From Guillardia theta CCMP2712 (lineage: Eukaryota > Protista > Cryptophyta), in NCBI RefSeq assembly GCF_000315625.1, contig NW_005434612.1, positions 391,038 through 455,037 of the forward strand: DNA of 64,000 nt, read 5' to 3'. Of the stretch, positions 5,050 through 64,000 are shown one piece after another (the stretch's first letter is position 1; each line of letters begins with the position of its first letter). The notes beneath the pieces are model-generated. The model worked only from the letters and a program-made list of their open reading frames with translations. It was not told the DNA's origin and ran no database searches. The position numbers and the translations under genes were made by a program.

Positions 5050-6098
5050 ATGAATCAGTGCAAGCACAGGTTTGAAGATTTGGAGTCGGATATGCCCGTA
5101 AAGGATTGTTGTCGACCAACCATGCATTGCAACGCTTGCTCCCAGCAGTTCGATGACTACATCAAGAACTCCATGAGCTGCACGTTCATTCGGCAGAACA
5201 ACAGAGACATCCGTAGGAACCCCACCAAGTTTTGCCCCAAGCCGTTGCCAGAATACGAGATGCTTCAGCTGACATCGAGCTTGTTGGACATGTTGCAGAA
5301 CGATAGGATCTTTTCTACCGGCAAAGGAGGCGACGAGGGTCGTACTGCAAGGGCGCACGGACAGAACTCTGGGTCAGTTTTGGCGAGCATCCGAGCCATG
5401 GGATTCGACCTGATCGTCCAGGTGATTCTCGAAAGTGATGCTATCATTGTTCTAACTCGTGACTATCGCAGCTTTTTCAAATTTATCAGGCCGACATCAA
5501 AGGGGACACGCTGGCGCTGAGCCTGAGCTACTTCCAAAGGTGCCTTGTCAGTGACACCCTGCCAGCCAACTATCAGAAGTGTGTGGAGTTTCCAGCGGCT
5601 TGCTTCTTTATTGCAACCAAGGTTGAGGAAGTGTGTACGCCCGACATCAGCAGACTAGCTATCTTGACCAACACGACGGCAGCGAACCTGTTGAGAATGG
5701 AGAAGATTGTCTTGGAAACCCTTTCGTTTGAACTCTACCCTGTGACCGCCTCGAGAATGATTGGTTCGCTCTTCTCCCTGGCGCCAGACACAATGGATGA
5801 TGTGAGAATGTTTGCAAATCGGTTCATTCAGTTGAACCCTGCTATCTTCCTCTCGAACGCTTCTCCTGCGGTTATCACGTCGGCGCTGCTGTGGCTCATT
5901 CATAGGGAATTCGACCTGAGCTGTGAAGACTGGAGTTGGGTTCCGCCTGACTTGCTTGTCTGGATATCGAAGCAGAACGAGCTTGACACGTGCTCGATGC
6001 CGGAGGATGCTGTGCCGTGTGCAGGCAACCAGACCGTGCTCTGTGAAGTGATTCAAGTCGCGGTGGCTCTGCACAAGATGGTTTCCAGGCGCTCCTGA
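5050..6098 (+). CDS. Divergent cyclin (cyclin N-terminal box); intron 5422-5471
   Basis: Spliced product reads IRAMGFDLIVQ|LFQIYQADIKGDTLALSLSYFQRCL...AACFFIATKVEEV...LLRMEKIVLETLSFELYPVTAS, with the conserved cyclin-box K and E residues. Confidence 0.85.
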
Positions 6099-50256: not shown

Positions 50257-50822
50257 ATGGCGAAGCTGCTATGGCTGATGACGATGGCGACGATGGCGAT
50301 GGGGATGAGAAGCGAAGGATGGGGAGACGGAAGAAGACACGTGGTGAGACGATGCAAGGAGAGAGGAGGAGAGGAGGAGACAAGAGAAGAAGCGATGAAC
50401 GATGGTATAGAAGTCTAGTCCAGGAAGGGGAGCAATCAGATATTGCACGAGAGGAGGACAAGCACAGACAGGGAGTCACCAAGGTCAAACTTAAAACCAT
50501 ATGTGATGGAGGATGATGAAAGATGTGGATGAGCGTGAAGAGAGGAGACGTGAAGCAAGGAGGTGAGATGGAGGTGGCATGGGAGTAGGATAGAGGGTAA
50601 GAGAAGAGGAGAGAGCCTTTCAGAGAACAGTCAAGGGGAATGAGTTAGGAGCGTCAAACGTAGGGAGGAAAAAGGGTTGAGAGGGGAGGAAGGAACTGAA
50701 AGGATTGCACTGAATCAAGTCCTAATTCAGACTCTTCAACCCTTTCCTTCACCCTTACGACTTCGCGGAGGCTTCTTTGGTTGGTGGAACCAGCAGCAGC
50801 AGCAGCAGCAGCAGGAAATGTT

Positions 50823-50866
<44 letters not shown>

Positions 50867-52363
50867 CCGAGGATAAGCCGCTGCACGTGCATGCTGTGGA
50901 GTACGGGCTGGCGGGGACGATGGACGGGATCCGGTCAGGCATTGGGCAGGGAGTAGGAAGTGAACTAGCTCGAGCTGTTACCTCAGCAATGCAGCATGGC
51001 GGACACGTGGGACAACTCGCCTTCATCCATGCGGTGTCCGCCTGGAGAGGCCGCCAGGTCCTTACCCCCTCCTTCTCCCTCCCTCTCCTTCTCCTCCTTT
51101 CCTTTTTCCTCCCTCCTCCTGCATCTTCTCTTCATCGCCTCTCGATCTGCATCCTCTTTGTCCGCCCTCCCTCTTGCAACTTCGTCCTCACGCAGCCTCC
51201 AGCGGCGTTCACAATGCCCAGCGGTGAGGAGCGGTGAGGAGCATGGCGATGCGGCTGCAGGAAGGCGATCCTTCGTCTGCTTCGTGACAGCGCCAAACGA
51301 GGAGGTGGCGACGAACCTCGCGCGCGAACTTGTCGCGTCAGGATGCGCCGCCTGTGTCAACCAAGTTGGAGGAGTCACGTCGACCTACGTGAGAGATGAT
51401 GAAAAGGAGGAGGGAGGGAGGGAGGGAGGGAGGAGGGGAGGGGAGGGGAGGGGAGGGGAGGGGAGGGGAGGGGGAGGGGAGGGGAGGGGAGGGGAGGGGA
51501 GGGAGGGGAGGGGAGGGNNNNNNNNNNNNNNNNNNNNNNNNNNNNNNNNNNNNNNNNNNNNNNNNNNNNNNNNNNNNNNNNNNNNNNNNNNNNNNNNNNN
51601 NNNNNNNNNNNNNNNNNNNNNNNNNNNNNNNNNNNNNNNNNNNNNNNNNNNNNNNNNNNNNNNNNNNNNNNNNNNNNNNNNNNNNNNNNNNNNNNNNNGG
51701 AAATGTGAGGGGCAGAGAAGACAAAATGAGCAGGAAAACAAAACAACGAAGAGACAGGGAAATGGGAGATCGAAGCGGTACGAAGGTCGAAGGTCAAAGA
51801 ATAGTCACCTCGATGATCCCCGCTATCTATTTTGTCTATTTTTTCTCTTGCTGATTTCTGTTGTTGAGACGCTACGGAGGCGAATCCTATCACCTCGCCG
51901 TTGACAGTAAAGAACATGACATCCATTTCAAACACCTAAAATTATGGTCATTCTCAACATAGGGAGGGAGGGAGGGAGGGAGGGAGGGAGGAGTGGCAGG
52001 GTTGACGGCATCGAAGATGTGGGAAGGAAAAATCCAGACGGATTCAGAGGTTCTTCTAATCATCAAGACAGTCGAGGAGAGAATCGCTGACATTCAGGTG
52101 CTCGACTGGAGGAGAAGAGGGAGGAGGAGAAAGAAGCTGATGTGTTGGTTGGGGTCAGGAGAAGATCAAGGAGACTCATCCTCATTCAGTGCCAGAGTTC
52201 ATCGCCATGGACATCAGTGCAGGTCGGGTAAAGGAGGGAGCAAGGGATGACAGTGAGGGGAGGGCAGGGGAGGGGAGAGAGGGAGAGGAGGGGTGAGGCT
52301 CACTGATCTCCAGGGCTTCCGGAGTACATGCAGTGGCTGCAGCACACGTGCAAGGTAAAGTGA
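50257..52363 (+). CDS. cutA: CutA divalent-cation tolerance protein with N-terminal signal peptide, LRLRGG motif and polyQ extension
   Basis: MAKLLWLMTMATMAMG...RRHV|TLQPFPSPLRLRGGFFGWWNQQ...; FVTAPNEEVATNLARELVASGCAACVNQVGGVTSTY|MWEGKIQTDSEVLLIIKT...HPHSVPEFIA...GLPEYMQWL. Confidence 0.85.
51518..51698. other. Assembly gap within a CutA intron
   Basis: Run of N after a (GGGGA)n tract. Confidence 1.
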
Positions 52364-55772: not shown

Positions 55773-56801
55773 TCACTGGGCAGTGAACATAGGGGCTCCA
55801 GCCGCATCTCCGGCTCCCCACTCAGCTCCACCAGCCTGCGCTCCCCACTCGTGCGCACCAGCACCAGCCCACTCGCCAGCTCCCTGCAGAGTCGCGTCGT
55901 AGCCCGTAGCATTGAATTCAGCAGGAGGAGCCTCGATGGCCTCCTTCTCGTTCTCCGCCTCCTTCTCCGCCTCCTCGGGGTCGCGGTAGAAGAACATGTC
56001 CACCATGATGTCCCACGGCGAGTTGCGCTGGATCACGTTGCGGAGGCGAAGGACCTCACGGGCGAGGAGCCAGTAGAGGAGGCCGATGGACTGCAGCAAA
56101 GTCAGCGCAGGGGAGGGCAGGGGAAGATCTTCACCTGCTTGCCCTTGTTGTTGGCAGGAACGGCGACGTCGACGAAGCGGAGAGGAGAGTCGGTGTCGCA
56201 GAAGGCAACAGTGGGGATGTTGACGAAGGAGGACTCGTGGAGGGGCTGCGAGTCCGTGCGGGGGTCGGTGATGACGAGGAGGCGGGGCTCCTGGAACTGC
56301 TGCTGGATCTGGTTGGTGAAGGTACCGGGGGTGTAGCGACCAGCCATGTAGTTGGCGCCAGTGTACTGACCGAACTTGAGCACGGCACGCTGACCATAAG
56401 GACGAGCAGAGATTACGCAAACTGTCAACAAGTCAATGGCGATCTCCTCGACCTCAGCCTCTCCCCCCCGCCTCATCCCCTGTCATCGCTGCCCTCCCTT
56501 TGCTCGTCTCTTGCTCGTCTCTTCTTACCATCAGCGGGGTTCTCGATGGCGACAACAATGCGGGCAGCGAGCATGAGCTTCTCCCACGTCTTGGCCAAGT
56601 TGATGATGTAAAGACCGTCAGCGCGGCGCTTCCAGATGTACGGCATCATCTTGTTGTCCAAGTTCTTGGTTCCGAGATGAACGTGGGCGGCGAGCATCTT
56701 CGCCCAGTCATCGTCGGTGGCTCGAAGCGCGGGAGGGAGGCTGGTGTTAGACTGCACCATCCACATCAGCTACATGGGAGCGACTTTCCTGATGCTACCA
56801 T
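55773..56801 (-). CDS. RPSA: 40S ribosomal protein SA (uS2/p40)
   Basis: M|SNTSLP...[13 protein letters not shown]...[27 protein letters not shown]|[17 protein letters not shown]...[13 protein letters not shown]...[13 protein letters not shown]...PANNKGKQ|[17 protein letters not shown]...[10 protein letters not shown]. Confidence 0.98.
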
Positions 56802-57039
56802 GCATTCTGAACACACGACAATACACATGTAGAGAGAAAAAATATCTTCCTCAAAGAAAAAAACTCCAGGAACGTCCGCAAAAGGGAAGGATGTTCATGG
56901 AAGAAGATAATGCTGAGGAGCACAAGAAGGAATGTAGCCCTCATATAACAGACGGCGCAGAATATATGCAAGAACGCAGCAAAAGGCACAGTGGACCGCC
57001 TTTTGTGGAGGCTTTGAAGAAGGGAGAAATGAGAAAGTA

Positions 57040-57093
57040 CAGCAGCAGCAGCAGCAGCAGCATTATCATCATCATCATCATCATCATCATCAT

Positions 57094-57126
<33 letters not shown>

Positions 57127-57190
57127 TGTCGTCTTCATCATCCTCCTCCTCCACCTCCTCCACCTCCTCCACCTCCTCCACCTCCTCTCA
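57040..57190 (+). repeat. Compound microsatellite (AGC)n(ATC)n(CTCCTCCAC)n upstream of RPSA
   Basis: Directly visible. Confidence 0.9.
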
Positions 57191-57249
57191 CCATGGCTGC
57201 ACGCGATGGCGTGGGTGAGAACCGGAGCTGCGCGTGCGACTAAAAAAAA

Positions 57250-57650
57250 CAATTGGGGTCAACAGGATACCCACCCTTAGATCACCCATAACCCCTTCAT
57301 CATGTACAAATTGGACCCCACGATTTGTATGCAGCGCGTGGCCATCAACCTTTGGGACCCCCATTTTTACCCAACAAACCAGAGGGATGGGTCAACAGAA
57401 TTTGCCCACGTCCCCACATAGACCACTGCTGGCCCCACAGGACCAACTCGAACATAGTTCAGTTCCCCGGCCGTTTTCCCCAGCAGCGGCCCCGAGCCGG
57501 GCCGGACTCACCCGGTGACCGTCTGGGCCGCAGGGTCCGACTGGAGGGTTCGGATAGTCTAGTCATGACTCAGTCGGTCAGTTCACGTTGACTCATGTAT
57601 TCGACCTTGATGACAAGTATCGTAGTATGACTCCGACTTAGTCTGATCTA
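57250..57650. promoter_or_regulatory. ACCCC/TACCC block (57250-57430) and GC-rich CCGG/TGACTC block (57460-57650) upstream of RPSA
   Basis: Mirror image of the layout found upstream of + strand genes. Confidence 0.45.
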
Positions 57651-57675
57651 AGTCACCTACAGTTCTTCCGAGACT

Positions 57676-60600
57676 TCACGTCCACTCGTTGCTTTCCTCT
57701 TGCTGGCCTCCTTCGACTTGAGCTGCGATCATCTCGTGGTGGAGGTCGATCACCATCACGCAGATGTTGTCGTAGGACCCCAACCTGTACGCCTCTCTCA
57801 CCAGCTCTTCGGCGCCATGATCCTTCTCTTCCCACTTCTTCCACACGAATTCGACGGCCTCTTGCGAGCTCATCACGTCCCAGAGCCCGTCGGTAGCCAG
57901 CAGGACGAACCGCTGGGCCTGAGGCTCGCGGGGCTTCACGTGGATCTCGGGCTCGGCGATGACGAACTGCTTCAGCTCAGCGTCGCCGATGGCGCGAGAG
58001 ACCGCGAGGTAGCCCATGACGCGAGGGACCCCCAGCTCGACCACAAAGCCTCCAGCAGCCTCAATGCGCGCCTGCTCGTCTGGACGTCCAGGTTTGTGAT
58101 CCTCTGTCAGGTCGATAGCTCTCACCTCCCCTCCCATCTCCTCCCCTTCCTCCTCCGCCTTCACCGCCAGCACAGCTCGAGAGTCGCCCGCATTCGCAGC
58201 AATGATGAAGGAGGGAGAGACAGCGACAGTGACGACACAGCAGCCATCGCGGACGCCGAGGGAAATGAAGTCTTGATCGGTCTTGACGTACGCCTGCAGC
58301 AACAGCTTCACTCCCCTCTCACTCTCTCACTCCAAACTCACCTGCTGGATGGCAGACTGAACTTCAGCGAGAGACGTCTCCTCCTCCAGCGACGATGCGA
58401 TATTATGCAGGAGCATCTCCCGCACGTAGAGGCTCCCGCGATAACCGTTGTGCCCGTCGAACACTCCGAAGAGAGACAGGTCTCGCTTCTTGATCCTCTT
58501 CCCTTCCTTGCCTTGCCCTCCTCCCTGCCCCTCCTCCCCCTCCTTCTCTTTCGCCTCCTCTTGCTCGCCGCATCGCACAAGAGCTGCAAAATTGTCTTCC
58601 ATGTAGTTGGGCAGCCCCTGCATCATGCAGGCATGCATGGGTCCGTCTTCCTCTCGATGAGTTGTCAGGTGAATCTCGTTGAACGCATCGTCTTGTTGAA
58701 GCCCTCCAACTTTGGGTGTCTCCTTCTGCGGATCGAGATAGTCGTCTGCCATGAGACTCTCTTGCTCTCCTTCCCCCGACTCCACCTCCTCCTCCTCCTG
58801 CTCTCAAGTTTCGTCACTGCTGGTCGAGCTAGCAGTCAATCCTCACCTCGGCCGAGCTTTGGGTGTTTGAGGCGGCAGGGATGACCTTGAGGACTCTCCT
58901 TCCTGCTCAGCTGTCACGGACCAACAGAGGCAGCAGCTTCAAGGCAGCACGAGGAGCACGAGGAAGATCATCAAGGTAGGGAGGAGGTGCCAAGGGCAGC
59001 AGATTCAACGGGCAGTGTCAAGGTGAAAGAGGGCATCACCGTATCGCTTTTGATTCAGCGCGCGTATAGCCTTGAGACTATCGTGGGGGTCGACGAAACG
59101 GACGAAGCCGTAGCCTTTGAAGGTAGGGGGACTCTTGGAGTGATCGAAGATCAAGCGCGCTTCCTTCACCTCCCCGTACTTTGAGAATAACATCTTGAGA
59201 TCTTCCTGCGCGCGGCAGTCAAACAATTCAATCCAAGTTCCCTGCCCCGTTACCAGTCTCTGAAAGCGCTTGTCGAGCCCTGTGACGAAGATCTCTTCGC
59301 ACATCAGCTCTGCCTCCGTCATGTTCGCGAGTGGATCCACTGTGGCAGACTTGAGCTTCTTCCTCCCGCTTGCTACAAGCTCTTCGTCTTCCTCCTGGTT
59401 TGTTTTCTCTCGCTTGTTGGCACTGGAGCTGTTGGAATCCTGAGAGCTTCTCATCCGTAGCTCGTCTTGAGAGTGAGCGAACAGGCAGTGCTCCATGTAT
59501 TTACATCTCCCCAGCTTCAGGTAGTTGGCGCACAACTCAGTCTTGTAGTTCCACCGCCTCTTCTTTCCCTGCCCTCCCTCCTCCTCTTGGTTCTTCGAGT
59601 TCTCCGCGTTTTGTCTTTGAAGGTCAACGGCAAGTCCAAAAAGCTCTGAGTTTGGATTGAGGCCCTAGGGAGACATGAGCTACCGACGGAAACAAAAGGA
59701 GGCACATGGGAGGAGAGTGGAAGAGACGGAAGTGCCAAGGAGAGGAGGGAGGAAAGCGGGTAGAGGCCGACATCGGAGAGGTTACCTCTTGTTGATTCTG
59801 AGGGACGTTGAGCTTCTTGTGTTGCTGCAGTGCGTTGATGAGAGCCTGCCAAGATTTAGATGGGTGAAGAGCACAACAAGGAAAACAACTTGCAGCATCT
59901 CGGGATCTTTCAGGATGGCACTCAAGTTTTCTGCCGAGCCACCAGCCTCTGGCGTTGGGCTCGCAGCACTGGTTTGCATCTCTTGCTTCTCCCTGAGTTT
60001 CTTCATCTCTACGTCCTGGTTGGCATGGGGCTGCATCTTCTCTATCGCCTCTTGCAGCATGAGGTAGCCCGAATTGTTCCGTTGCACCAGGGCAACTGAC
60101 GTCGCGACCCAGTTCTTCCTCACGAGGTTGTAAGCTGCATCGATCTTCACGATGTCTCCAACCCACAGCCCTTTGATCCCGCACGCATCTCGCAGCTCAT
60201 TCTTAATGTAGATACAATCGTCTGCAAATGAGAAGTTCTTTCCCGAGCTCGTGATGGTACAAGTGTACCCGATCTTGGGTGGCTGAAGTTGTTCAGGAAA
60301 GAATTGACTGACAGTCGACTTCTCGGCTTGTTGCGTCAAGGATGCGGTGACATCCTCCAAGGTCGATGAGTCTTTGACTGCGCAAGATGTCTCATTGTCC
60401 GGAGGGAGAGGCTGGCTCGTGGGGTCTGGAGAGTACTTTCCCTTGGAAACGCTCAATGCCCGCCAGTTGTTGCTTCCTTTCTTGTGCGGCTGGCAGATGA
60501 CTTGCAGCTCGAAGTTTCCCTGACCCTTGAGGATGTTCCACCACCGCTGAACCTCCAGCCATAAATCTTGCGAGAATGTTCGCCGCGAGATGAAGATATC

Positions 60601-62031
60601 GGCTTGTCCCGGAGCAGATTCTGAGATGCAGAAGTGTGCGTCCGGGGGATACGAGTCTGACGCCATCACCCTCGCGATCTTGCCCGAAAAGGTCGAGTTT
60701 TCTGGGCCGTTTTCTGCGGCAACTGGACCTGAACCTGTTCGGTCTGTCTGCGTCAAGATGGCTGCCAACTTCGAGGTGTCAAAAGGAGATCGAAGCTCAT
60801 CCCTCCCATGCGCAAACGAGCATATCCTCTCGAACTGACAGGTTCCTTTCTGCATGAACTCACGGCACAAGCGAGTCTTGTGGAGAAGCAAGTGCTTTGG
60901 GATTGTCAGAAGAGAATTGGACTTGTCGGCGTCCGTTTGGGCATTGCTATCTGCTTTTTCTGCAGGCACGGTACTCTCGGAGGTTCTTGCAGCTTCAATA
61001 TGGTTGGACTTCTGTTTCTCTTCCTGATGGTCTAAGTTTTGATTCCTCATCAAGCCCGGGGCTGGAGAACTTCTTGGAGGAGCAGCAGCGTGTTGATTGA
61101 AGGAGTCTTCTTCCATGGGTGAGTCATACCTCATGTTGCTGCGATGGTCCCAACGGTTATCTGCGGGTTCCTTGTGTAGACGAGGATGAAGAGGTCGTCT
61201 TGAAGGTGCTTCAGATCCATCGGCCGCGATCTTCTTGTCACTCATCCTTCCTGTAAGTCTTCGAGTCGCTGCTTCTTCTGGTCTCAGACTGTAAACGGGA
61301 GAATGCGGCCTCATCCTGTCTTTGGACACGACGACTTGTCCCGTCATGAGCATCGCCGACTCGAAGGAAATCGGTTCGCCCGATCGATACACCACTTGGC
61401 CATCTCTCGAGATGTAGTCTTTGTGATACAAGGATCTCCATCGATCTACTATTCGTTTGAGGTCCGCACTCCCCCCGAGATGGTTCAGGATAGACAAGCA
61501 CTTCTGAGCTACCTCACTCTTCAATGCAGCTAGGTTGTTCCTAGAACGATCTTCCGACTTGCTTTTCCTGATGGAGGAGGAGGATATTTCCTTTCTGGCA
61601 GCATCTCGATGGTATTCGTGTGCCTTTCCCAACTTCCTGGAGTAAGCCCGCGCTTCTGCTATAGACGCGCTTCGCTCGTCGTCATCGGAATTCCGAGCTC
61701 CACCCCTGAGCCGGCACAGGGACATTACTGCATACTCCACATGAGCGCAGGAGAGCTGTGTGCTGCCTCGAGAAGCTTCAAGCCCTTGAGGCTGCCGCGC
61801 GAGTTGTCTGTCTGGGGGAAACGGAAGAGAGGTGAGGATCTTACAACTAGCTGCAGTGATGGCTAAGTTTTCAAGGTGAGACGGACACTGATGGTTCTTC
61901 GATCCGGCCAAGGCAAGAGTGCACAGCAAGATCAAAACAAAGCTCGTCGAACTTCTATGGACTAGAAATGCTCGTGACCAACTTAGACCTTCACTCCTTG
62001 TCATGCCCCTCAGCGACATCAGCTTCACCAT
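57676..62031 (-). CDS. Signal peptide-RLRGG-LOTUS-like-CCCH-2x S1/OB-CCCH-RRM-PP2C fusion protein (~1300 aa)
   Basis: Exons 62031-59890, 59845-59786, 59664-59040 (plus a probable 48-nt in-frame intron), 58902-58847, 58797-58342 and 58293-57676 join in frame at GT-AG sites. Motifs: HKTRLCREFMQKGTCQFERICSFAH, YKTELCANYLKLGRCKYMEHCLFAH, RNP1 KGYGFVRF; PP2C MED, VFDGHNG, ANAGDSR, DHKP, LAVSRAIGD, ATDGLWD, GSYDNI. Confidence 0.8.
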
Positions 62032-62528
62032 CCACTTTCAAACGGATCGAGGATTGTTTCGCCGATGTACAGACACCAGCAGGAGTTCAGCTGCGGAGAT
62101 GTTTGTCTCGCGAGCTCATTTTGACGGCCTCCTGTCACTGACCACCCGCAACTCGCGGAGAGCACGAGGGTCGCATCACCTCTCGGCCATCCACCTGCTG
62201 CGCGTTCCAGCTGGTCGGCGTTCAGCTCATCATGCGGGTCTGCCGCATCCTTCGGCCATCATGTTCAGCTCGTCTGCCTCCTGCCTCCTCGATCTCCTCC
62301 TCCTCCGTTCGATCCTCCCCCTCCTCCAAGCTCTCTCCCCCTCGCCATGCCCGCGCCGCCGTTATCGTTGTAACAGGAGAAGGGACGGGCTCGACAGGGT
62401 GAGGGTACCCCTGGTGGGGGTCAATTTGTACCCAGAAAAGTGTTGAGTGAAAGAACATCGCTAGCTGGGATCGGGGGGTGGGGTCATGGGCTGTCGTCTG
62501 GTCCGCCTCAGACATCGGCACGTGAAGG

Positions 62529-64000
62529 ATGAGAATGGCAAGGAAGGCGAAGAACGCTCGGTCGAAGCGAGCGATGATGGCGCGAGAGGCGAAGGTGGTG
62601 GAGGAAGAGAGAAGCTCCCTCTTCATGCGCGGCACGAGCACCAACGAGCTGATCAACGAGATCCTCAAGGATCTGGTGACATGGTAATGATGTGCCTCTG
62701 CGAGCCACTGAAAGCCGTGTAGAACGCTCTCAAGCAGCCAAATTCAACCTTCTTCCGACGACGAAACGACAAGCGACCATTTGAGGATGAGACTTCGGTC
62801 TATTTGTTGCATCGCTGTTGCACAAAAGCCTCACACCGGCTTGTCAGGTTGAGTTTCTCTGCATGAAAAACGAAGCTTCAATTTTTGGCTTCGGAACACA
62901 TAGCAAGAAGCGGCCCAACAATTTGATTCTTGGCAGAATGTTTGACTACAAGGTAAGAGCATGAAGATGTTCTGTCCAACTTCTGCTTACATTAACTTTT
63001 AGATCTATGACATGTATGAGTTTGGCTTAACCGAAGTGAAACCCGCCTGCTTGTTTTCAGCCAACTCTGCGCCGTATGTTTGCCGATGAGACTGACGGCC
63101 AGCACGACATGGTAGAGACTGACGTCACTGGTGCAGGAGCTACCAGAACAAGCCTCTCATTGTCTTCCAGGGTGATGCGTTCGAGACAGACACAAAGGTA
63201 GGGCTGTTGCCCTTCGCAGCCTGTCTGACTTGAGTTGGCAGCTTGAGGGCCTCAAGAACTTTTTCCTCGACATGTTTGCGCACAAGGCGATGGACAAAAT
63301 CAACTTGGGGGGACTGGAGCATGTGATTGTTCTGACAGCCGAGGTTAGCCCTGCCATCCCTTGCTGTGTCGACACTCACTGCAGCTGCAGGGATCCAAGG
63401 TGGCATTCCGGCACTACAGCATTTCGTTCAAGAAGTCAGGCGGACGAGTGCCGAGAGTGGAGTTGGAGGAGCTCGGTAAGCCGCGAGCTACTCGGCTTTT
63501 CGTGACGTGGCTCTAAGGGCCTAGCTTCAACATGGAGCTGCGAAGGGAACGAGAAGCTTCAGCTGATATCAAGAGGGTAGACCTTCTGCCTCTGCGCGTT
63601 GCAACCTCACCGGGGGGACAGGCTGCTTGCAGGGTACCTAAGCAAGTGAAAGCTCAATCCAAGCTCAAGAAGAACTATGAACGTGAGAACTTGCCTCCTC
63701 TTTCTTCCCAGACTGATGGATGAGGCAGGGAACGCGCTCGGGGAGACGATGGGTCGAATTCACATGCAGAAGCAAAGCTTGGACGAATTTCAGGTGCCTT
63801 GAGCAGAAGCGCCGGAGGTTTCGATCTGACAAGCTGCCTCCACAGACTCGAAAGGTTAAGGCGCTCAAGAGAGGCCGAGATAAAGTTGTAAGTGGCAAAT
63901 CAAACCTTGTGGAAACTTGTCCCACTCAATAATGCTGGCAGGTTGAGGCTGAGAGAGCAAAAGAAGAGGCAAAGCGAGCAAAGCGAATGGACGATAGTGA
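62529..64000 (+). CDS. RPF2: Ribosome production factor 2 (Brix domain), multi-exon, runs to the window end
   Basis: Hand translation, largely missed by the ORF track: KAKNARSKRAMMAREAKVVEEERSSLFMRG...ILKDL|NALKQP...RPFEDETS|VEFLCMKNEASIFGFGTHSKKRPNNLILGRMFDYK|IYDMYEFG...KPLIVFQGDAFE...PRVELEELG|PSFNM. Confidence 0.93.

What the first reader, a model, noticed from the sequence alone, without database searches (positions are those of the whole stretch)
57676..62031. RNA-binding multi-module protein fused to an intact PP2C phosphatase, behind a signal peptide + RLRGG leader
Seen: four ORF-track entries join through GT-AG introns into one frame. The intron at 58903-59039 supplies the missing last strand of the RRM (ALNQKRY-G|RRVLKVIP), and the next exon runs straight into the PP2C, with no promoter-type block between them. 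Known motifs: two TTP-like CCCH fingers (each with a [HY]KT[RE]LC lead-in), an RRM, and PP2C metal-binding Asp motifs. Inferred: a LOTUS/OST-HTH-like segment (EVAQKCLSILNHLGGSADLKRIVDRWRSLY) and two S1/cold-shock-like barrels. I know of no described CCCH-RRM-PP2C architecture. A hydrophobic N-terminal signal on an RNA regulator suggests import into the periplastid compartment/nucleomorph or plastid, i.e. a host-encoded RNA-tethered phosphatase acting on endosymbiont gene expression (hypothesis).
Basis: partly seen in the sequence, partly recalled or inferred. Interest (0 to 1): 0.85.

Follow-up and report, generated by a model that had tools for sequence, protein, structure and literature searches.

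The report
Cryptophyte RNA-binding PP2C phosphatase fusion gene
One seven-exon gene of a cryptophyte alga (probably Guillardia theta) encodes a 1302-residue protein that joins several RNA-binding modules to an apparently active PP2C phosphatase behind a conserved secretory-type leader, which makes it a candidate host-encoded regulator sent into the alga's complex plastid.

Summary
Spliced transcript contigs from two studies run unbroken from 57582 to 62346 on the minus strand. They remove six GT-AG introns and leave one 1302-codon frame (ATG 62031, stop 57676-57678). It missed a 44-nt intron plus a 60-nt mini-exon, and a 48-nt in-frame intron inside the RRM.

- **Confirmed domains:** two TTP-type CCCH fingers about 370 residues apart, an RRM and a PP2C domain. 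The PP2C metal-binding acidic motifs are intact, but Pro stands where PPM1A has its phosphate-binding Arg33.
- **Barrels:** barrel 2 is an S1-like/cold-shock fold (Z 11.0 to the DBC1 S1-like domain). Barrel 1 is probably the same fold.
- **LOTUS assignment:** not supported. That segment is a conserved domain of unresolved, possibly winged-helix, fold.
- **Distribution:** the same architecture recurs in Hanusia phi and in uncultured marine, apparently cryptophyte, contigs. I found it nowhere else.
- **Leader:** a charged start, a 13-16-residue hydrophobic core, a low-acid linker and LRGG are conserved in three orthologues. Codon-position bias against a 95% relative shows the leader is translated. 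It is not a decayed ubiquitin.

Periplastid targeting is the best reading but is not demonstrated. First-stage notes report signal-peptide-plus-LRGG leaders at other places in this genome. No paper I found describes this architecture.

The parts
57676..62031 (-). Coding region of the gene. Seven exons: 62031-59890, 59845-59786, 59664-59254, 59205-59040, 58902-58847, 58797-58342, 58293-57676. 1302 codons plus stop.
   Evidence: Spliced contigs of X1 and X2, GT..AG check, single ORF.
57582..62346 (-). Extent of the assembled transcript. The 5' UTR is about 315 nt with 8 upstream ATGs. The 3' UTR is about 94 nt.
61903..62031 (-). Signal-peptide-like N-terminus (residues 1-43): a basic n-region, then the hydrophobic core FVLILLCTLALAG (residues 31-43) with an ALA|GS cleavage-type site.
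   Evidence: Hydropathy analysis and conservation in Hanusia and L001. Substitutions against L006 fall 5/0/13 by codon position.
61711..61902 (-). Linker (residues 44-107) with few acidic residues and net positive charge, like a transit peptide.
61699..61710 (-). LRGG (residues 108-111, in the context CRLRGG|A), conserved as PLRGG|A in Hanusia and ALRGG|S in L001. It sits at the switch from the low-charge leader to a highly charged sequence.
61282..61533 (-). An alpha/beta domain of unresolved fold, possibly winged-helix.
   Evidence: 30 invariant columns across 4 sequences. Model pLDDT 64. No structural or Pfam match. Only weak winged-helix leads, 0.82-0.86.
60808..60867 (-). CCCH finger 1, C-X8-C-X5-C-X3-H (residues 389-408), with lead-in LHKTRLC.
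   Evidence: Pfam zf-CCCH 25.5 bits; pattern match.
60442..60690 (-). Barrel 1 (residues 448-530), probably an OB/cold-shock-like fold (strand-strand-strand-helix-strand-strand).
   Evidence: AlphaFold model pLDDT 58-80. Weak CSD / S1-like leads, 0.77-0.83. Conserved in P0003, P0006 and L005.
60073..60276 (-). Barrel 2 (residues 586-653), an S1-like/cold-shock fold and the most conserved family-specific block (ITSSGKNFSFADD...WVGD...NWVA).
   Evidence: pLDDT 85-92. Foldseek top hit 8ez6, the DBC1 S1-like domain, E 1.4e-3, TMt 0.80. VIA Z 11.0, rmsd 1.6 A, 64 of 65 residues; cold-shock proteins Z 8-9.8. 51 invariant columns.
59822..59925 (-). Conserved motif LSAILKDPEMLQALINALQQ. It spans the 44-nt intron 59846-59889.
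   Evidence: The motif aligns with LRDPNVLQTLISALQQ of P0003 and P0004 only when the intron is removed.
59473..59532 (-). CCCH finger 2, C-X8-C-X5-C-X3-H (residues 779-798), with lead-in NYKTELC.
   Evidence: Pfam zf-CCCH 29.2 bits; pattern match.
58874..59295 (-). RRM (residues 858-936), spread over three exons. RNP2 is IFVTGL, RNP1 is KGYGFVRF, and the last strand RRVLKVIPA lies after intron 58903-59039.
   Evidence: Pfam RRM_1 50.9 bits; junctions.
57742..58638 (-). PP2C catalytic domain (residues 999-1281), split by intron 58294-58341. Motifs present: YMED, FDGHNG, GDSR, DHKP, SRAIGD, DGLWD, DN. An acidic/Gly-rich insert lies between MED and DGH.
   Evidence: Pfam PP2C 151 bits. The orthologue P0004 matches ABI1, HAB1 and PPM1A at E 2e-33 to 5e-26. 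Motif positions.

Best explanation
This is one nuclear gene of a cryptophyte, most likely Guillardia theta or a very close relative. It is transcribed on the minus strand, spliced at six short GT-AG introns and translated from ATG 62031 into a 1302-residue pre-protein.

Shown:
- The exon structure and the single reading frame.
- The order of modules: signal-type leader ending in LRGG, conserved domain A, CCCH finger, two S1/cold-shock-like barrels, CCCH finger, RRM, PP2C.
- Conservation of that order in other cryptophyte-type genomes.
- Translation of the leader.

Inferred mechanism:
1. The hydrophobic N-terminus takes the nascent protein into the ER.
2. Signal-peptidase-type cleavage after ALA leaves Gly rather than an aromatic residue, and the next ~65 residues look like a transit peptide. 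The cryptophyte targeting rule then sends the protein across the periplastid membrane into the periplastid compartment, where the nucleomorph and its ribosomes lie. The leader is removed near the conserved LRGG.
3. There the single-strand RNA-binding modules hold the protein on RNA or ribonucleoprotein particles.
4. The C-terminal metal-dependent PP2C removes phosphate from Ser/Thr of proteins bound to the same RNA.

The protein would therefore act as an RNA-tethered phosphatase through which the host influences gene expression of the endosymbiont.
For: - **Gene model:** spliced contigs from two studies, and a continuous ORF.
- **Independent support for the fusion from intron-poor relatives:**
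  - P0003 is one ORF from CCCH1 to the start of PP2C.
  - P0004 is one ORF from barrel 2 to the end of PP2C.
  - The first L005 ORF runs from CCCH1 through the RRM. After a short CA-repeat stretch, presumably an intron, a second ORF carries the PP2C.
  - Hanusia P0002 has all the domains.
- **Domains:**
- **Leader conserved in three orthologues:** positive n-region, 13-16-residue hydrophobic core, linker with net charge +1 to +3, then LRGG followed by a sequence with 25-29 charged residues in 60.
- **Leader is coding:** against the 95% relative L006 there are 18 substitutions, none at second codon positions, 13 at third positions and no indels (P = 0.0009). The 5' UTR shows 3/6/6 and has indels.
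- **Family distribution:** besides the window, members are Hanusia phi (Cryptophyceae) and marine metagenome contigs. The gene next to one of these is closest to Hemiselmis virescens at 45%, against 27-30% for the unnamed next-best hits. No member from another group turned up among 5.8 billion clustered or 1.84 billion representative proteins.
- **Targeting rule:** signal peptide plus transit-peptide-like region, with an aromatic +1 residue needed for the stroma, is established knowledge (Gould et al. 2006, as cited in PMC12136025).
Against: - No signal-peptide or ASAFind-type predictor could be run. The cleavage site is my reading of an A-x-A site.
- The n-region is long (about 30 residues from the first ATG, about 20 from Met10).
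- In the L001 orthologue the residues after the hydrophobic core are SDW, so an aromatic residue lies near +2. A stromal destination is not excluded there.
- The 5' UTR holds 8 upstream ATGs, so the efficiency and site of initiation are uncertain.
- The position of PPM1A Arg33, which binds the substrate phosphate, is Pro in all three orthologues (QGLPNYMED). I aligned this by eye against the PPM1A sequence from memory; the tools did not align that stretch. Activity or substrate range may therefore differ.
- RNA binding, phosphatase activity, localisation and substrates are all untested.
- Runs X1 and X2 are labelled RNA only by guess, although the missing introns show they are cDNA.
- The raw RNA run gave only 5 reads.
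Confidence: 0.55

Rival explanations
1. Same protein, but it is imported all the way into the plastid stroma and acts on plastid RNA-protein complexes.
For: The leader has the two-part shape used for both destinations. Plastids hold AU-rich RNA and many imported RNA-binding proteins (general knowledge). In the L001 orthologue a Trp lies close behind the hydrophobic core.
Against: In Guillardia and Hanusia the residues after the likely cleavage site are GSK, with no aromatic residue. Eukaryote-type CCCH, RRM and S1-like modules fit a eukaryotic cytosol-like compartment better, though this is only an inference.
Confidence: 0.12
2. The hydrophobic segment is an ordinary secretory signal or a membrane anchor. 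The protein then stays in the endomembrane system, or sits on the ER or outer plastid membrane facing the cytosol, with no role inside the endosymbiont.
For: The n-region is unusually long for a cleaved signal peptide. No predictor was run. The hydrophobic core is the only such segment outside the PP2C core.
Against: The core is only 13-16 residues, which is signal-peptide length rather than a membrane span. The positive charges precede it, which places the bulk of the protein on the lumenal side, and RNA-binding modules would have no ligand in the ER lumen (inference). The linker plus LRGG is conserved across orthologues that are only about 34% identical over domain A. That argues for a functional presequence.
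Confidence: 0.2
3. The PP2C domain is not a conventional protein phosphatase. It would be a pseudo-enzyme or have an altered substrate, and the protein would work mainly as an RNA-binding scaffold.
For: Pro replaces the phosphate-binding Arg of PPM1A in all orthologues. A roughly 35-residue acidic/Gly-rich insert separates the MED and DGH motifs (alignment by eye).
Against: All acidic metal ligands and the DGH His are kept, as are GDSR, DHKP, SRAxGD, DGLWD and DN. The domain is the best conserved part between distant orthologues.
Confidence: 0.1
4. The RNA-binding part and the PP2C part are two genes. In this reading the single contig comes from read-through or from an assembly chimera.
For: Contigs cannot prove a single molecule. 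Contigs break or branch at the (GGA)n-rich stretch 58780-58805, and one odd joint 62303->58782 exists in X1 and X2.
Against: Two clean GT-AG junctions link the RRM exons to the PP2C exons and keep one frame, with no stop for 1302 codons. The breaks at 58780-58805 also occur in the DNA run, so they are repeat effects. Relatives carry RRM and PP2C in one uninterrupted ORF (P0004).
Confidence: 0.03

Closest known systems
PPM/PP2C phosphatases (plant clade A ABI1/HAB1; human PPM1A)
   Same: The C-terminal 280 residues match Pfam PP2C. The orthologue's domain matches ABI1 at E 2.4e-33 and PPM1A at E 5e-26. All metal-binding acidic motifs are present.
   Different: It carries about 1000 residues of RNA-binding modules and a secretory-type leader in front. 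Pro stands at the PPM1A Arg33 position. There is a long acidic/Gly-rich insert after MED. The known multi-domain PP2Cs I can name from memory (KAPP with FHA, PHLPP with PH and LRR, yeast adenylate cyclase) use protein-binding partner domains, not RNA-binding ones.
TTP/ZFP36-type CCCH zinc fingers
   Same: Both fingers have the C-X8-C-X5-C-X3-H spacing and a KT(R/E)LC lead-in. This type binds AU-rich single-stranded RNA (general knowledge).
   Different: The fingers are about 370 residues apart with two barrels between them. In the tandem TZF domain they are 18 residues apart.
S1-like domain of DBC1/CCAR2 and CCAR1, and cold-shock domains (CspA, YB-1, Unr/CSDE1, Lin28)
   Same: Barrel 2 superposes on the DBC1 S1-like domain (8ez6) with Z 11.0, rmsd 1.6 A and 23% identity, and on cold-shock proteins with Z 8-9.8.
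   Different: No Pfam S1-like or CSD hit at the sequence level. FSFAD replaces the FGFI-type RNP1 motif of cold-shock domains (by eye). The domain forms its own small family, which also occurs in short Lys-rich proteins.
Multi-module RNA-binding proteins fused to an enzyme, such as MARF1 (LOTUS repeats + RRM + NYN nuclease)
   Same: The logic is the same: several RNA-binding modules bring a catalytic domain to RNA.
   Different: The enzyme here is a protein phosphatase, not a nuclease. LOTUS domains could not be shown.
Bipartite targeting signals of cryptophyte periplastid proteins (signal peptide plus transit-peptide-like region without aromatic +1)
   Same: A signal-type hydrophobic core is followed by a low-acid, net-positive stretch. 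Gly follows the A-x-A site.
   Different: The n-region is long. A conserved LRGG closes the leader, identical to the last four residues of ubiquitin. I found no paper holding both 'Guillardia' and 'LRGG'.

Membership tests
PPM/PP2C phosphatase | Pfam PF00481 match above the gathering score | tested here: met
   151.3 bits on the last exon alone against a cut-off of 20.3. Orthologues score 155.6 and 171.9 bits.
PPM/PP2C phosphatase | Metal-binding acidic residues and the DGH motif (PPM1A E37/D38, D60/G61/H62, D146, D239/D243, D282) | tested here: met
   YMED 1010-1013, FDGHNG 1058-1063, GDSR 1133-1136, DGLWD 1232-1236 and DN 1272-1273. The match to PPM1A numbering is from memory.
PPM/PP2C phosphatase | Phosphate-binding Arg before MED (PPM1A Arg33) | tested here: not met
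   QGLPNYMED in Guillardia, Hanusia and P0004, with Pro at that position. The alignment is by eye, because HMMER did not align this stretch.
PPM/PP2C phosphatase | Mn/Mg-dependent Ser/Thr phosphatase activity | not testable with these tools
   Needs an enzyme assay.
RRM | Pfam RRM_1 match with RNP1 and RNP2 motifs | tested here: met
   50.9 bits. RNP2 is IFVTGL and RNP1 is KGYGFVRF. The P0004 RRM covers profile positions 2-67 of 70.
TTP/ZFP36 tandem zinc finger (TZF) domain | C-X8-C-X5-C-X3-H fingers with a (R/K)YKTELC-type lead-in | tested here: met
   Both fingers have the spacing. The lead-ins are LHKTRLC and NYKTELC.
TTP/ZFP36 tandem zinc finger (TZF) domain | Two fingers in tandem separated by about 18 residues | tested here: not met
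   The fingers lie at residues 389-408 and 779-798.
S1-like / cold-shock OB fold | Five-stranded barrel superposable on solved S1-like or CSD domains | tested here: met
   Barrel 2: pLDDT 85-92, Z 11.0, rmsd 1.6 A over 64 of 65 residues of 8ez6_A.
S1-like / cold-shock OB fold | The same for barrel 1 | tested here: inconclusive
   pLDDT 58-80 and an OB-type order of strands and helix. It aligned only as part of two-domain alignments. Feature search gave CSD / S1-like leads at 0.77-0.83.
S1-like / cold-shock OB fold | Sequence match to Pfam S1-like (PF14444) or CSD (PF00313) | tested here: not met
   No such hit at E <= 10.
LOTUS / OST-HTH | Pfam OST-HTH match, or structural match to solved LOTUS domains | tested here: not met
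   No Pfam hit. LOTUS rows score only E 1.3-2.3, probability 0.05-0.08, TM 0.2-0.33. VIA best Z is 3.2, with no LOTUS row. The model is weak (pLDDT 64), so the fold stays open.
Cryptophyte periplastid-targeted pre-protein (bipartite leader) | N-terminal signal peptide | tested here: inconclusive
   A 13-residue core with mean hydropathy 2.7 follows a basic n-region and ends in an A-x-A site. It is conserved in three orthologues. No SignalP-type tool was run.
Cryptophyte periplastid-targeted pre-protein (bipartite leader) | Transit-peptide-like stretch with no aromatic residue at +1 | tested here: met
   The 64-residue linker has 7 K+R against 4 D+E, and GSK follows the A-x-A site. This depends on the assumed cleavage site.
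Cryptophyte periplastid-targeted pre-protein (bipartite leader) | Localisation in the periplastid compartment | not testable with these tools
   Needs a GFP fusion or immunolocalisation.
Ubiquitin-like domain in the leader | Sequence similarity of the 40-68 residues before LRGG to ubiquitin | tested here: not met
   No ubiquitin chain of the PDB at E <= 10 and no Pfam ubiquitin hit.

The most novel reading that the evidence does not exclude
The conserved LRGG that closes the leader may be a processing signal. It is identical to the last four residues of ubiquitin. It is conserved in three orthologues of this gene, and first-stage notes report it behind signal peptides on many unrelated genes of this genome, including CutA in this window. 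In this reading, presequences of proteins entering the cryptophyte complex plastid are cut after Gly-Gly by a ubiquitin-tail-specific protease of the ERAD-derived import machinery. The residue exposed by that cut (Ala here, Phe in CutA) then decides between staying in the periplastid compartment and onward import. This gene would be a periplastid-resident example, and its product an RNA-tethered phosphatase acting on nucleomorph gene expression.
Probability: 0.15. Interest if true: 0.85.

Novelty: new variant of a known kind. Interest (0 to 1): 0.55.

Why it matters
How the host cell controls the remnant nucleus (nucleomorph) and the ribosomes kept between the plastid membranes of cryptophytes is largely unknown. 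A host-encoded protein found so far only in cryptophyte-type genomes would be a concrete, testable candidate for such control. This one has a conserved import-type leader, five or six RNA-binding modules and a phosphatase. The architecture would also be an unusual way to aim a PP2C, by direct fusion to RNA-binding domains rather than through partner proteins. The conserved LRGG at the end of the leader gives a simple handle for asking where and how periplastid presequences are removed, by mutating it or by sequencing the mature N-terminus.

Tried and rejected
1. **Leader as a decayed ubiquitin.** The stretch PPDRQ...LE...RLRGG looked ubiquitin-like by eye. It is rejected: no PDB or Pfam hit, and shuffle z-scores of 2.3, -0.9 and 0.1.
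2. **LOTUS assignment.** Pfam, Foldseek and VIA-wide gave nothing. The feature search gave only weak winged-helix leads.
3. **Tool alignment of the RxxMED region to solved PP2Cs.** It failed, and local alignments start at FGVFDGH. The Arg-to-Pro statement therefore rests on my own alignment.
4. **Representative search with residues 150-714.** It returned mostly unrelated CCCH proteins, and only about a dozen family-specific fragments.
5. **Metagenome scan for more orthologues with N-termini.**
   - The first call failed for lack of a conserved block.
   - The second gave three short contigs without the N-terminal part.
6. **Scan for further hydrophobic-core-plus-[LMVI]RGG leaders.** I scanned the window, L001 and L002 within single ORFs. 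It found only this gene and its orthologue, plus two compositional false positives. Intron-split leaders such as CutA's are missed by that test.
7. **Raw RNA run X19.** It gave 5 reads, too few for strand or ends.

Full report
**Gene model.** I laid four public runs on 57200-63000.

- Two runs from different studies each gave one long contig: X1 (4308 nt) and X2 (4318 nt). These cover 57582 to 62333/62346 and skip six segments.
- A DNA-type run (X12) reads straight through the same places, so the joined form exists only as RNA.
- After the one-base shift the tool indicates, all six segments are GT..AG on the minus strand: 59846-59889 (44 nt), 59665-59785 (121), 59206-59253 (48), 58903-59039 (137), 58798-58846 (49) and 58294-58341 (48).
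- The spliced sequence has a single ORF of 1302 codons from ATG 62031, two codons after an in-frame stop, to the stop at 57676-57678.

It missed the 44-nt intron and the 60-nt exon 59786-59845, so the tail of its first ORF is intron read-through. It also missed the 48-nt in-frame, stop-free intron inside the RRM.

The 44-nt intron has independent support. Only after its removal does the sequence read LKDPEMLQALINALQQ, which aligns with LRDPNVLQTLISALQQ of distant relatives.

**Is it one gene?** Contigs alone cannot prove single molecules, but two further lines agree.

- The frame stays open across all six junctions.
- Intron-poor relatives carry the same modules in uninterrupted ORFs:
  - P0003 runs from CCCH1 to the first PP2C motif.
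  - P0004 runs from barrel 2 to the end of PP2C.
  - In L005 one 880-codon ORF runs from CCCH1 through the RRM. After a short CA-repeat stretch, presumably an intron, a second ORF carries the PP2C.
  - The Hanusia phi transcript-derived protein P0002 (1264 residues, 66% identical) has zf-CCCH, RRM_1 and PP2C.
- In L001 the gene caller split the orthologue in two. A 122-nt GT..AG intron (5626-5747) joins the parts in frame.

Contig breaks near 58780-58805 also occur in the DNA run and lie in a (GGA)n-rich stretch. They are repeat effects, not transcript ends.

**Organism and distribution.** The closest named relative is Hanusia phi, of the Geminigeraceae within the Cryptophyceae. The window is therefore most likely Guillardia theta or a near relative. 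This is an inference, because run and organism names are coded.

- A metagenome contig, L006, is about 95% identical at the DNA level.
- The more distant members come from Tara Oceans and JGI marine metagenomes.
- The gene next to the L001 orthologue is closest to Hemiselmis virescens, another cryptophyte, at 45% identity. The unnamed next-best hits reach 27-30%.
- No member from another group appeared among the 5.8 billion clustered proteins or the 1.84 billion representatives.
- The word-index search has length limits, and transcriptome fragments may have been missed.

**Domains.**

- **CCCH fingers, RRM and PP2C.** Pfam gives zf-CCCH at residues 385-410 and about 776-802, RRM_1, and PP2C. 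Both fingers have C-X8-C-X5-C-X3-H spacing and a KT(R/E)LC lead-in. They lie about 370 residues apart, so this is not a TTP tandem domain.
- **Barrels.** An AlphaFold model of residues 440-665, built on 15 aligned sequences, gives barrel 2 at pLDDT 85-92 and barrel 1 at 58-80. Both have the strand-strand-strand-helix-strand-strand order of an OB fold.
  - Barrel 2 matches the S1-like domain of DBC1/CCAR2 (8ez6). Foldseek gives E 1.4e-3 and TMt 0.80. VIA gives Z 11.0, rmsd 1.6 A over 64 of 65 residues at 23% identity. Cold-shock proteins follow at Z 8-9.8.
  - Barrel 1 has only weak support.
It is clearly a conserved domain, with 30 invariant columns. Its model is poor (pLDDT 64). Pfam, Foldseek and the wide VIA search find no credible match. 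A feature search points weakly (0.82-0.86) to winged-helix families. The LOTUS label is therefore not supported, and 'possibly winged-helix' is the most that can be said.
- **PP2C catalytic motifs.** The orthologue's domain matches ABI1, HAB1 and PPM1A at E 2e-33 to 5e-26. The motifs MED, DGH, GDSR, DHKP, SRAIGD, DGLWD and DN are all present.
  - One departure stands out. By my own alignment to the PPM1A sequence from memory, the phosphate-binding Arg33 position is Pro (QGLPNYMED) in all three orthologues. The tools did not align that stretch.
  - A roughly 35-residue acidic/Gly-rich insert follows MED.

**Leader.** The first 111 residues have four parts, all present in Guillardia, Hanusia and the L001 orthologue:

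- a basic n-region;
- a 13-16-residue hydrophobic core, which is signal-peptide length rather than a membrane span, ending in ALA|GS;
- a 40-68-residue linker with few acidic residues and net charge +1 to +3;
- LRGG, after which the sequence turns highly charged.

The Met just before RLRGG in Guillardia has no counterpart in the orthologues, so translation must start upstream. Comparison with the 95% relative L006 shows that the leader is translated in this frame. There are 18 substitutions, distributed 5/0/13 over codon positions, and no indels (P about 0.0009). The 5' UTR shows 3/6/6 and has indels.

Under the established cryptophyte rule, a signal peptide plus a transit-peptide-like stretch directs import, and an aromatic residue at +1 is needed for the stroma (Gould et al. 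2006, cited in PMC12136025). Gly after the A-x-A site therefore points to the periplastid compartment. This step is an inference. No predictor was available, the n-region is long, and the L001 orthologue has a Trp near the site.

**The LRGG motif.** It equals the last four residues of ubiquitin. I tested whether the whole linker is a decayed ubiquitin, and it is not.

First-stage notes of this scan report the same 'signal peptide ... [LMV]RGG' pattern on many unrelated genes of this genome. None has been followed up.

In this window I confirmed one such case. An ORF upstream of a CutA1 domain reads PLRLRGG followed by FFGWW. I found no paper holding both 'Guillardia' and 'LRGG'.

That the motif marks a Gly-Gly-specific processing step of plastid import is an attractive reading but an untested one. 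I list it as the novel case, not as the best explanation.

**Mechanism and verdict.**
- *Shown:* the gene, the transcript, the module order, its conservation, and a translated, conserved secretory-type leader.
- *Inferred:* ER entry, transfer into the periplastid compartment, RNA binding by the CCCH, S1-like and RRM modules, and dephosphorylation by the PP2C of proteins on the same RNA.

Rival readings:
- **Stromal destination:** possible.
- **Endomembrane or membrane-anchored protein:** possible, but hard to square with RNA-binding modules on the lumenal side.
- **PP2C with altered or lost activity:** raised by the Arg-to-Pro change.
- **Two separate genes:** practically excluded.

I found no published description of a CCCH-RRM-PP2C architecture or of periplastid RNA-binding phosphatases in Guillardia. 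The paper library is incomplete, and the Guillardia genome annotation could not be consulted. I class the finding as a new variant of a known kind: a PP2C with a new targeting arrangement. It is of moderate interest in itself and of higher interest if the leader motif proves to be a general import code.

Noticed in passing
window 50257-51420 (+): A CutA1-domain gene (Pfam CutA1 on 51290-51420). Its upstream exon reads ...PLRLRGG followed directly by FFGWW and a poly-Gln run. LRGG is therefore followed here by aromatic residues, unlike the Ala in the PP2C gene. The gene model was not resolved, and an assembly gap (run of N) lies inside the gene.
   Followed up: partly
window 62032-62346 (-): The 5' UTR of the PP2C gene, as assembled, holds 8 upstream ATGs. 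All open short uORFs. This may mean translational control or heterogeneous transcript starts.
   Followed up: no
window 62303 and 58782: Contigs of X1 and X2 contain a joint from 62303 to 58782 with 13 extra letters between. Both sides are (GGA)n-rich. It is probably an assembly artefact at low-complexity sequence, but it occurs in two studies.
   Followed up: no
window 59206-59253 (-) and P0002 residues about 871-888: The 48-nt intron inside the RRM is in frame and has no stop. The Hanusia transcript-derived protein has 17 extra residues at exactly this place. Intron retention may give an alternative isoform with an insert in the RRM.
   Followed up: no
P0023, P0043, P0117 (representative library): The S1-like barrel 2 domain also occurs in short proteins with long Lys-rich tails, and P0023 and P0043 each carry a second, partial copy. 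It forms a small domain family of its own, without a Pfam model hit.
   Followed up: no
window 56473-56766 (-) and 62516-62964 (+): The neighbouring genes are a ribosomal protein SA/S2 exon and a Brix-domain (RPF2-like) gene. The Brix gene has 47- and 50-nt GT-AG introns confirmed by contigs.
   Followed up: partly
window about 56900-57180: A long trinucleotide microsatellite gives poly-Ile and poly-Asp ORFs on opposite strands, between the ribosomal protein gene and the 3' end of the PP2C gene.
   Followed up: no
L001 5626-5747: The uncultured marine orthologue was split into two called genes (598 and 993 residues). One 122-nt GT..AG intron joins them in frame into a protein of about 1590 residues with a long C-terminal extension after PP2C.
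   Followed up: partly
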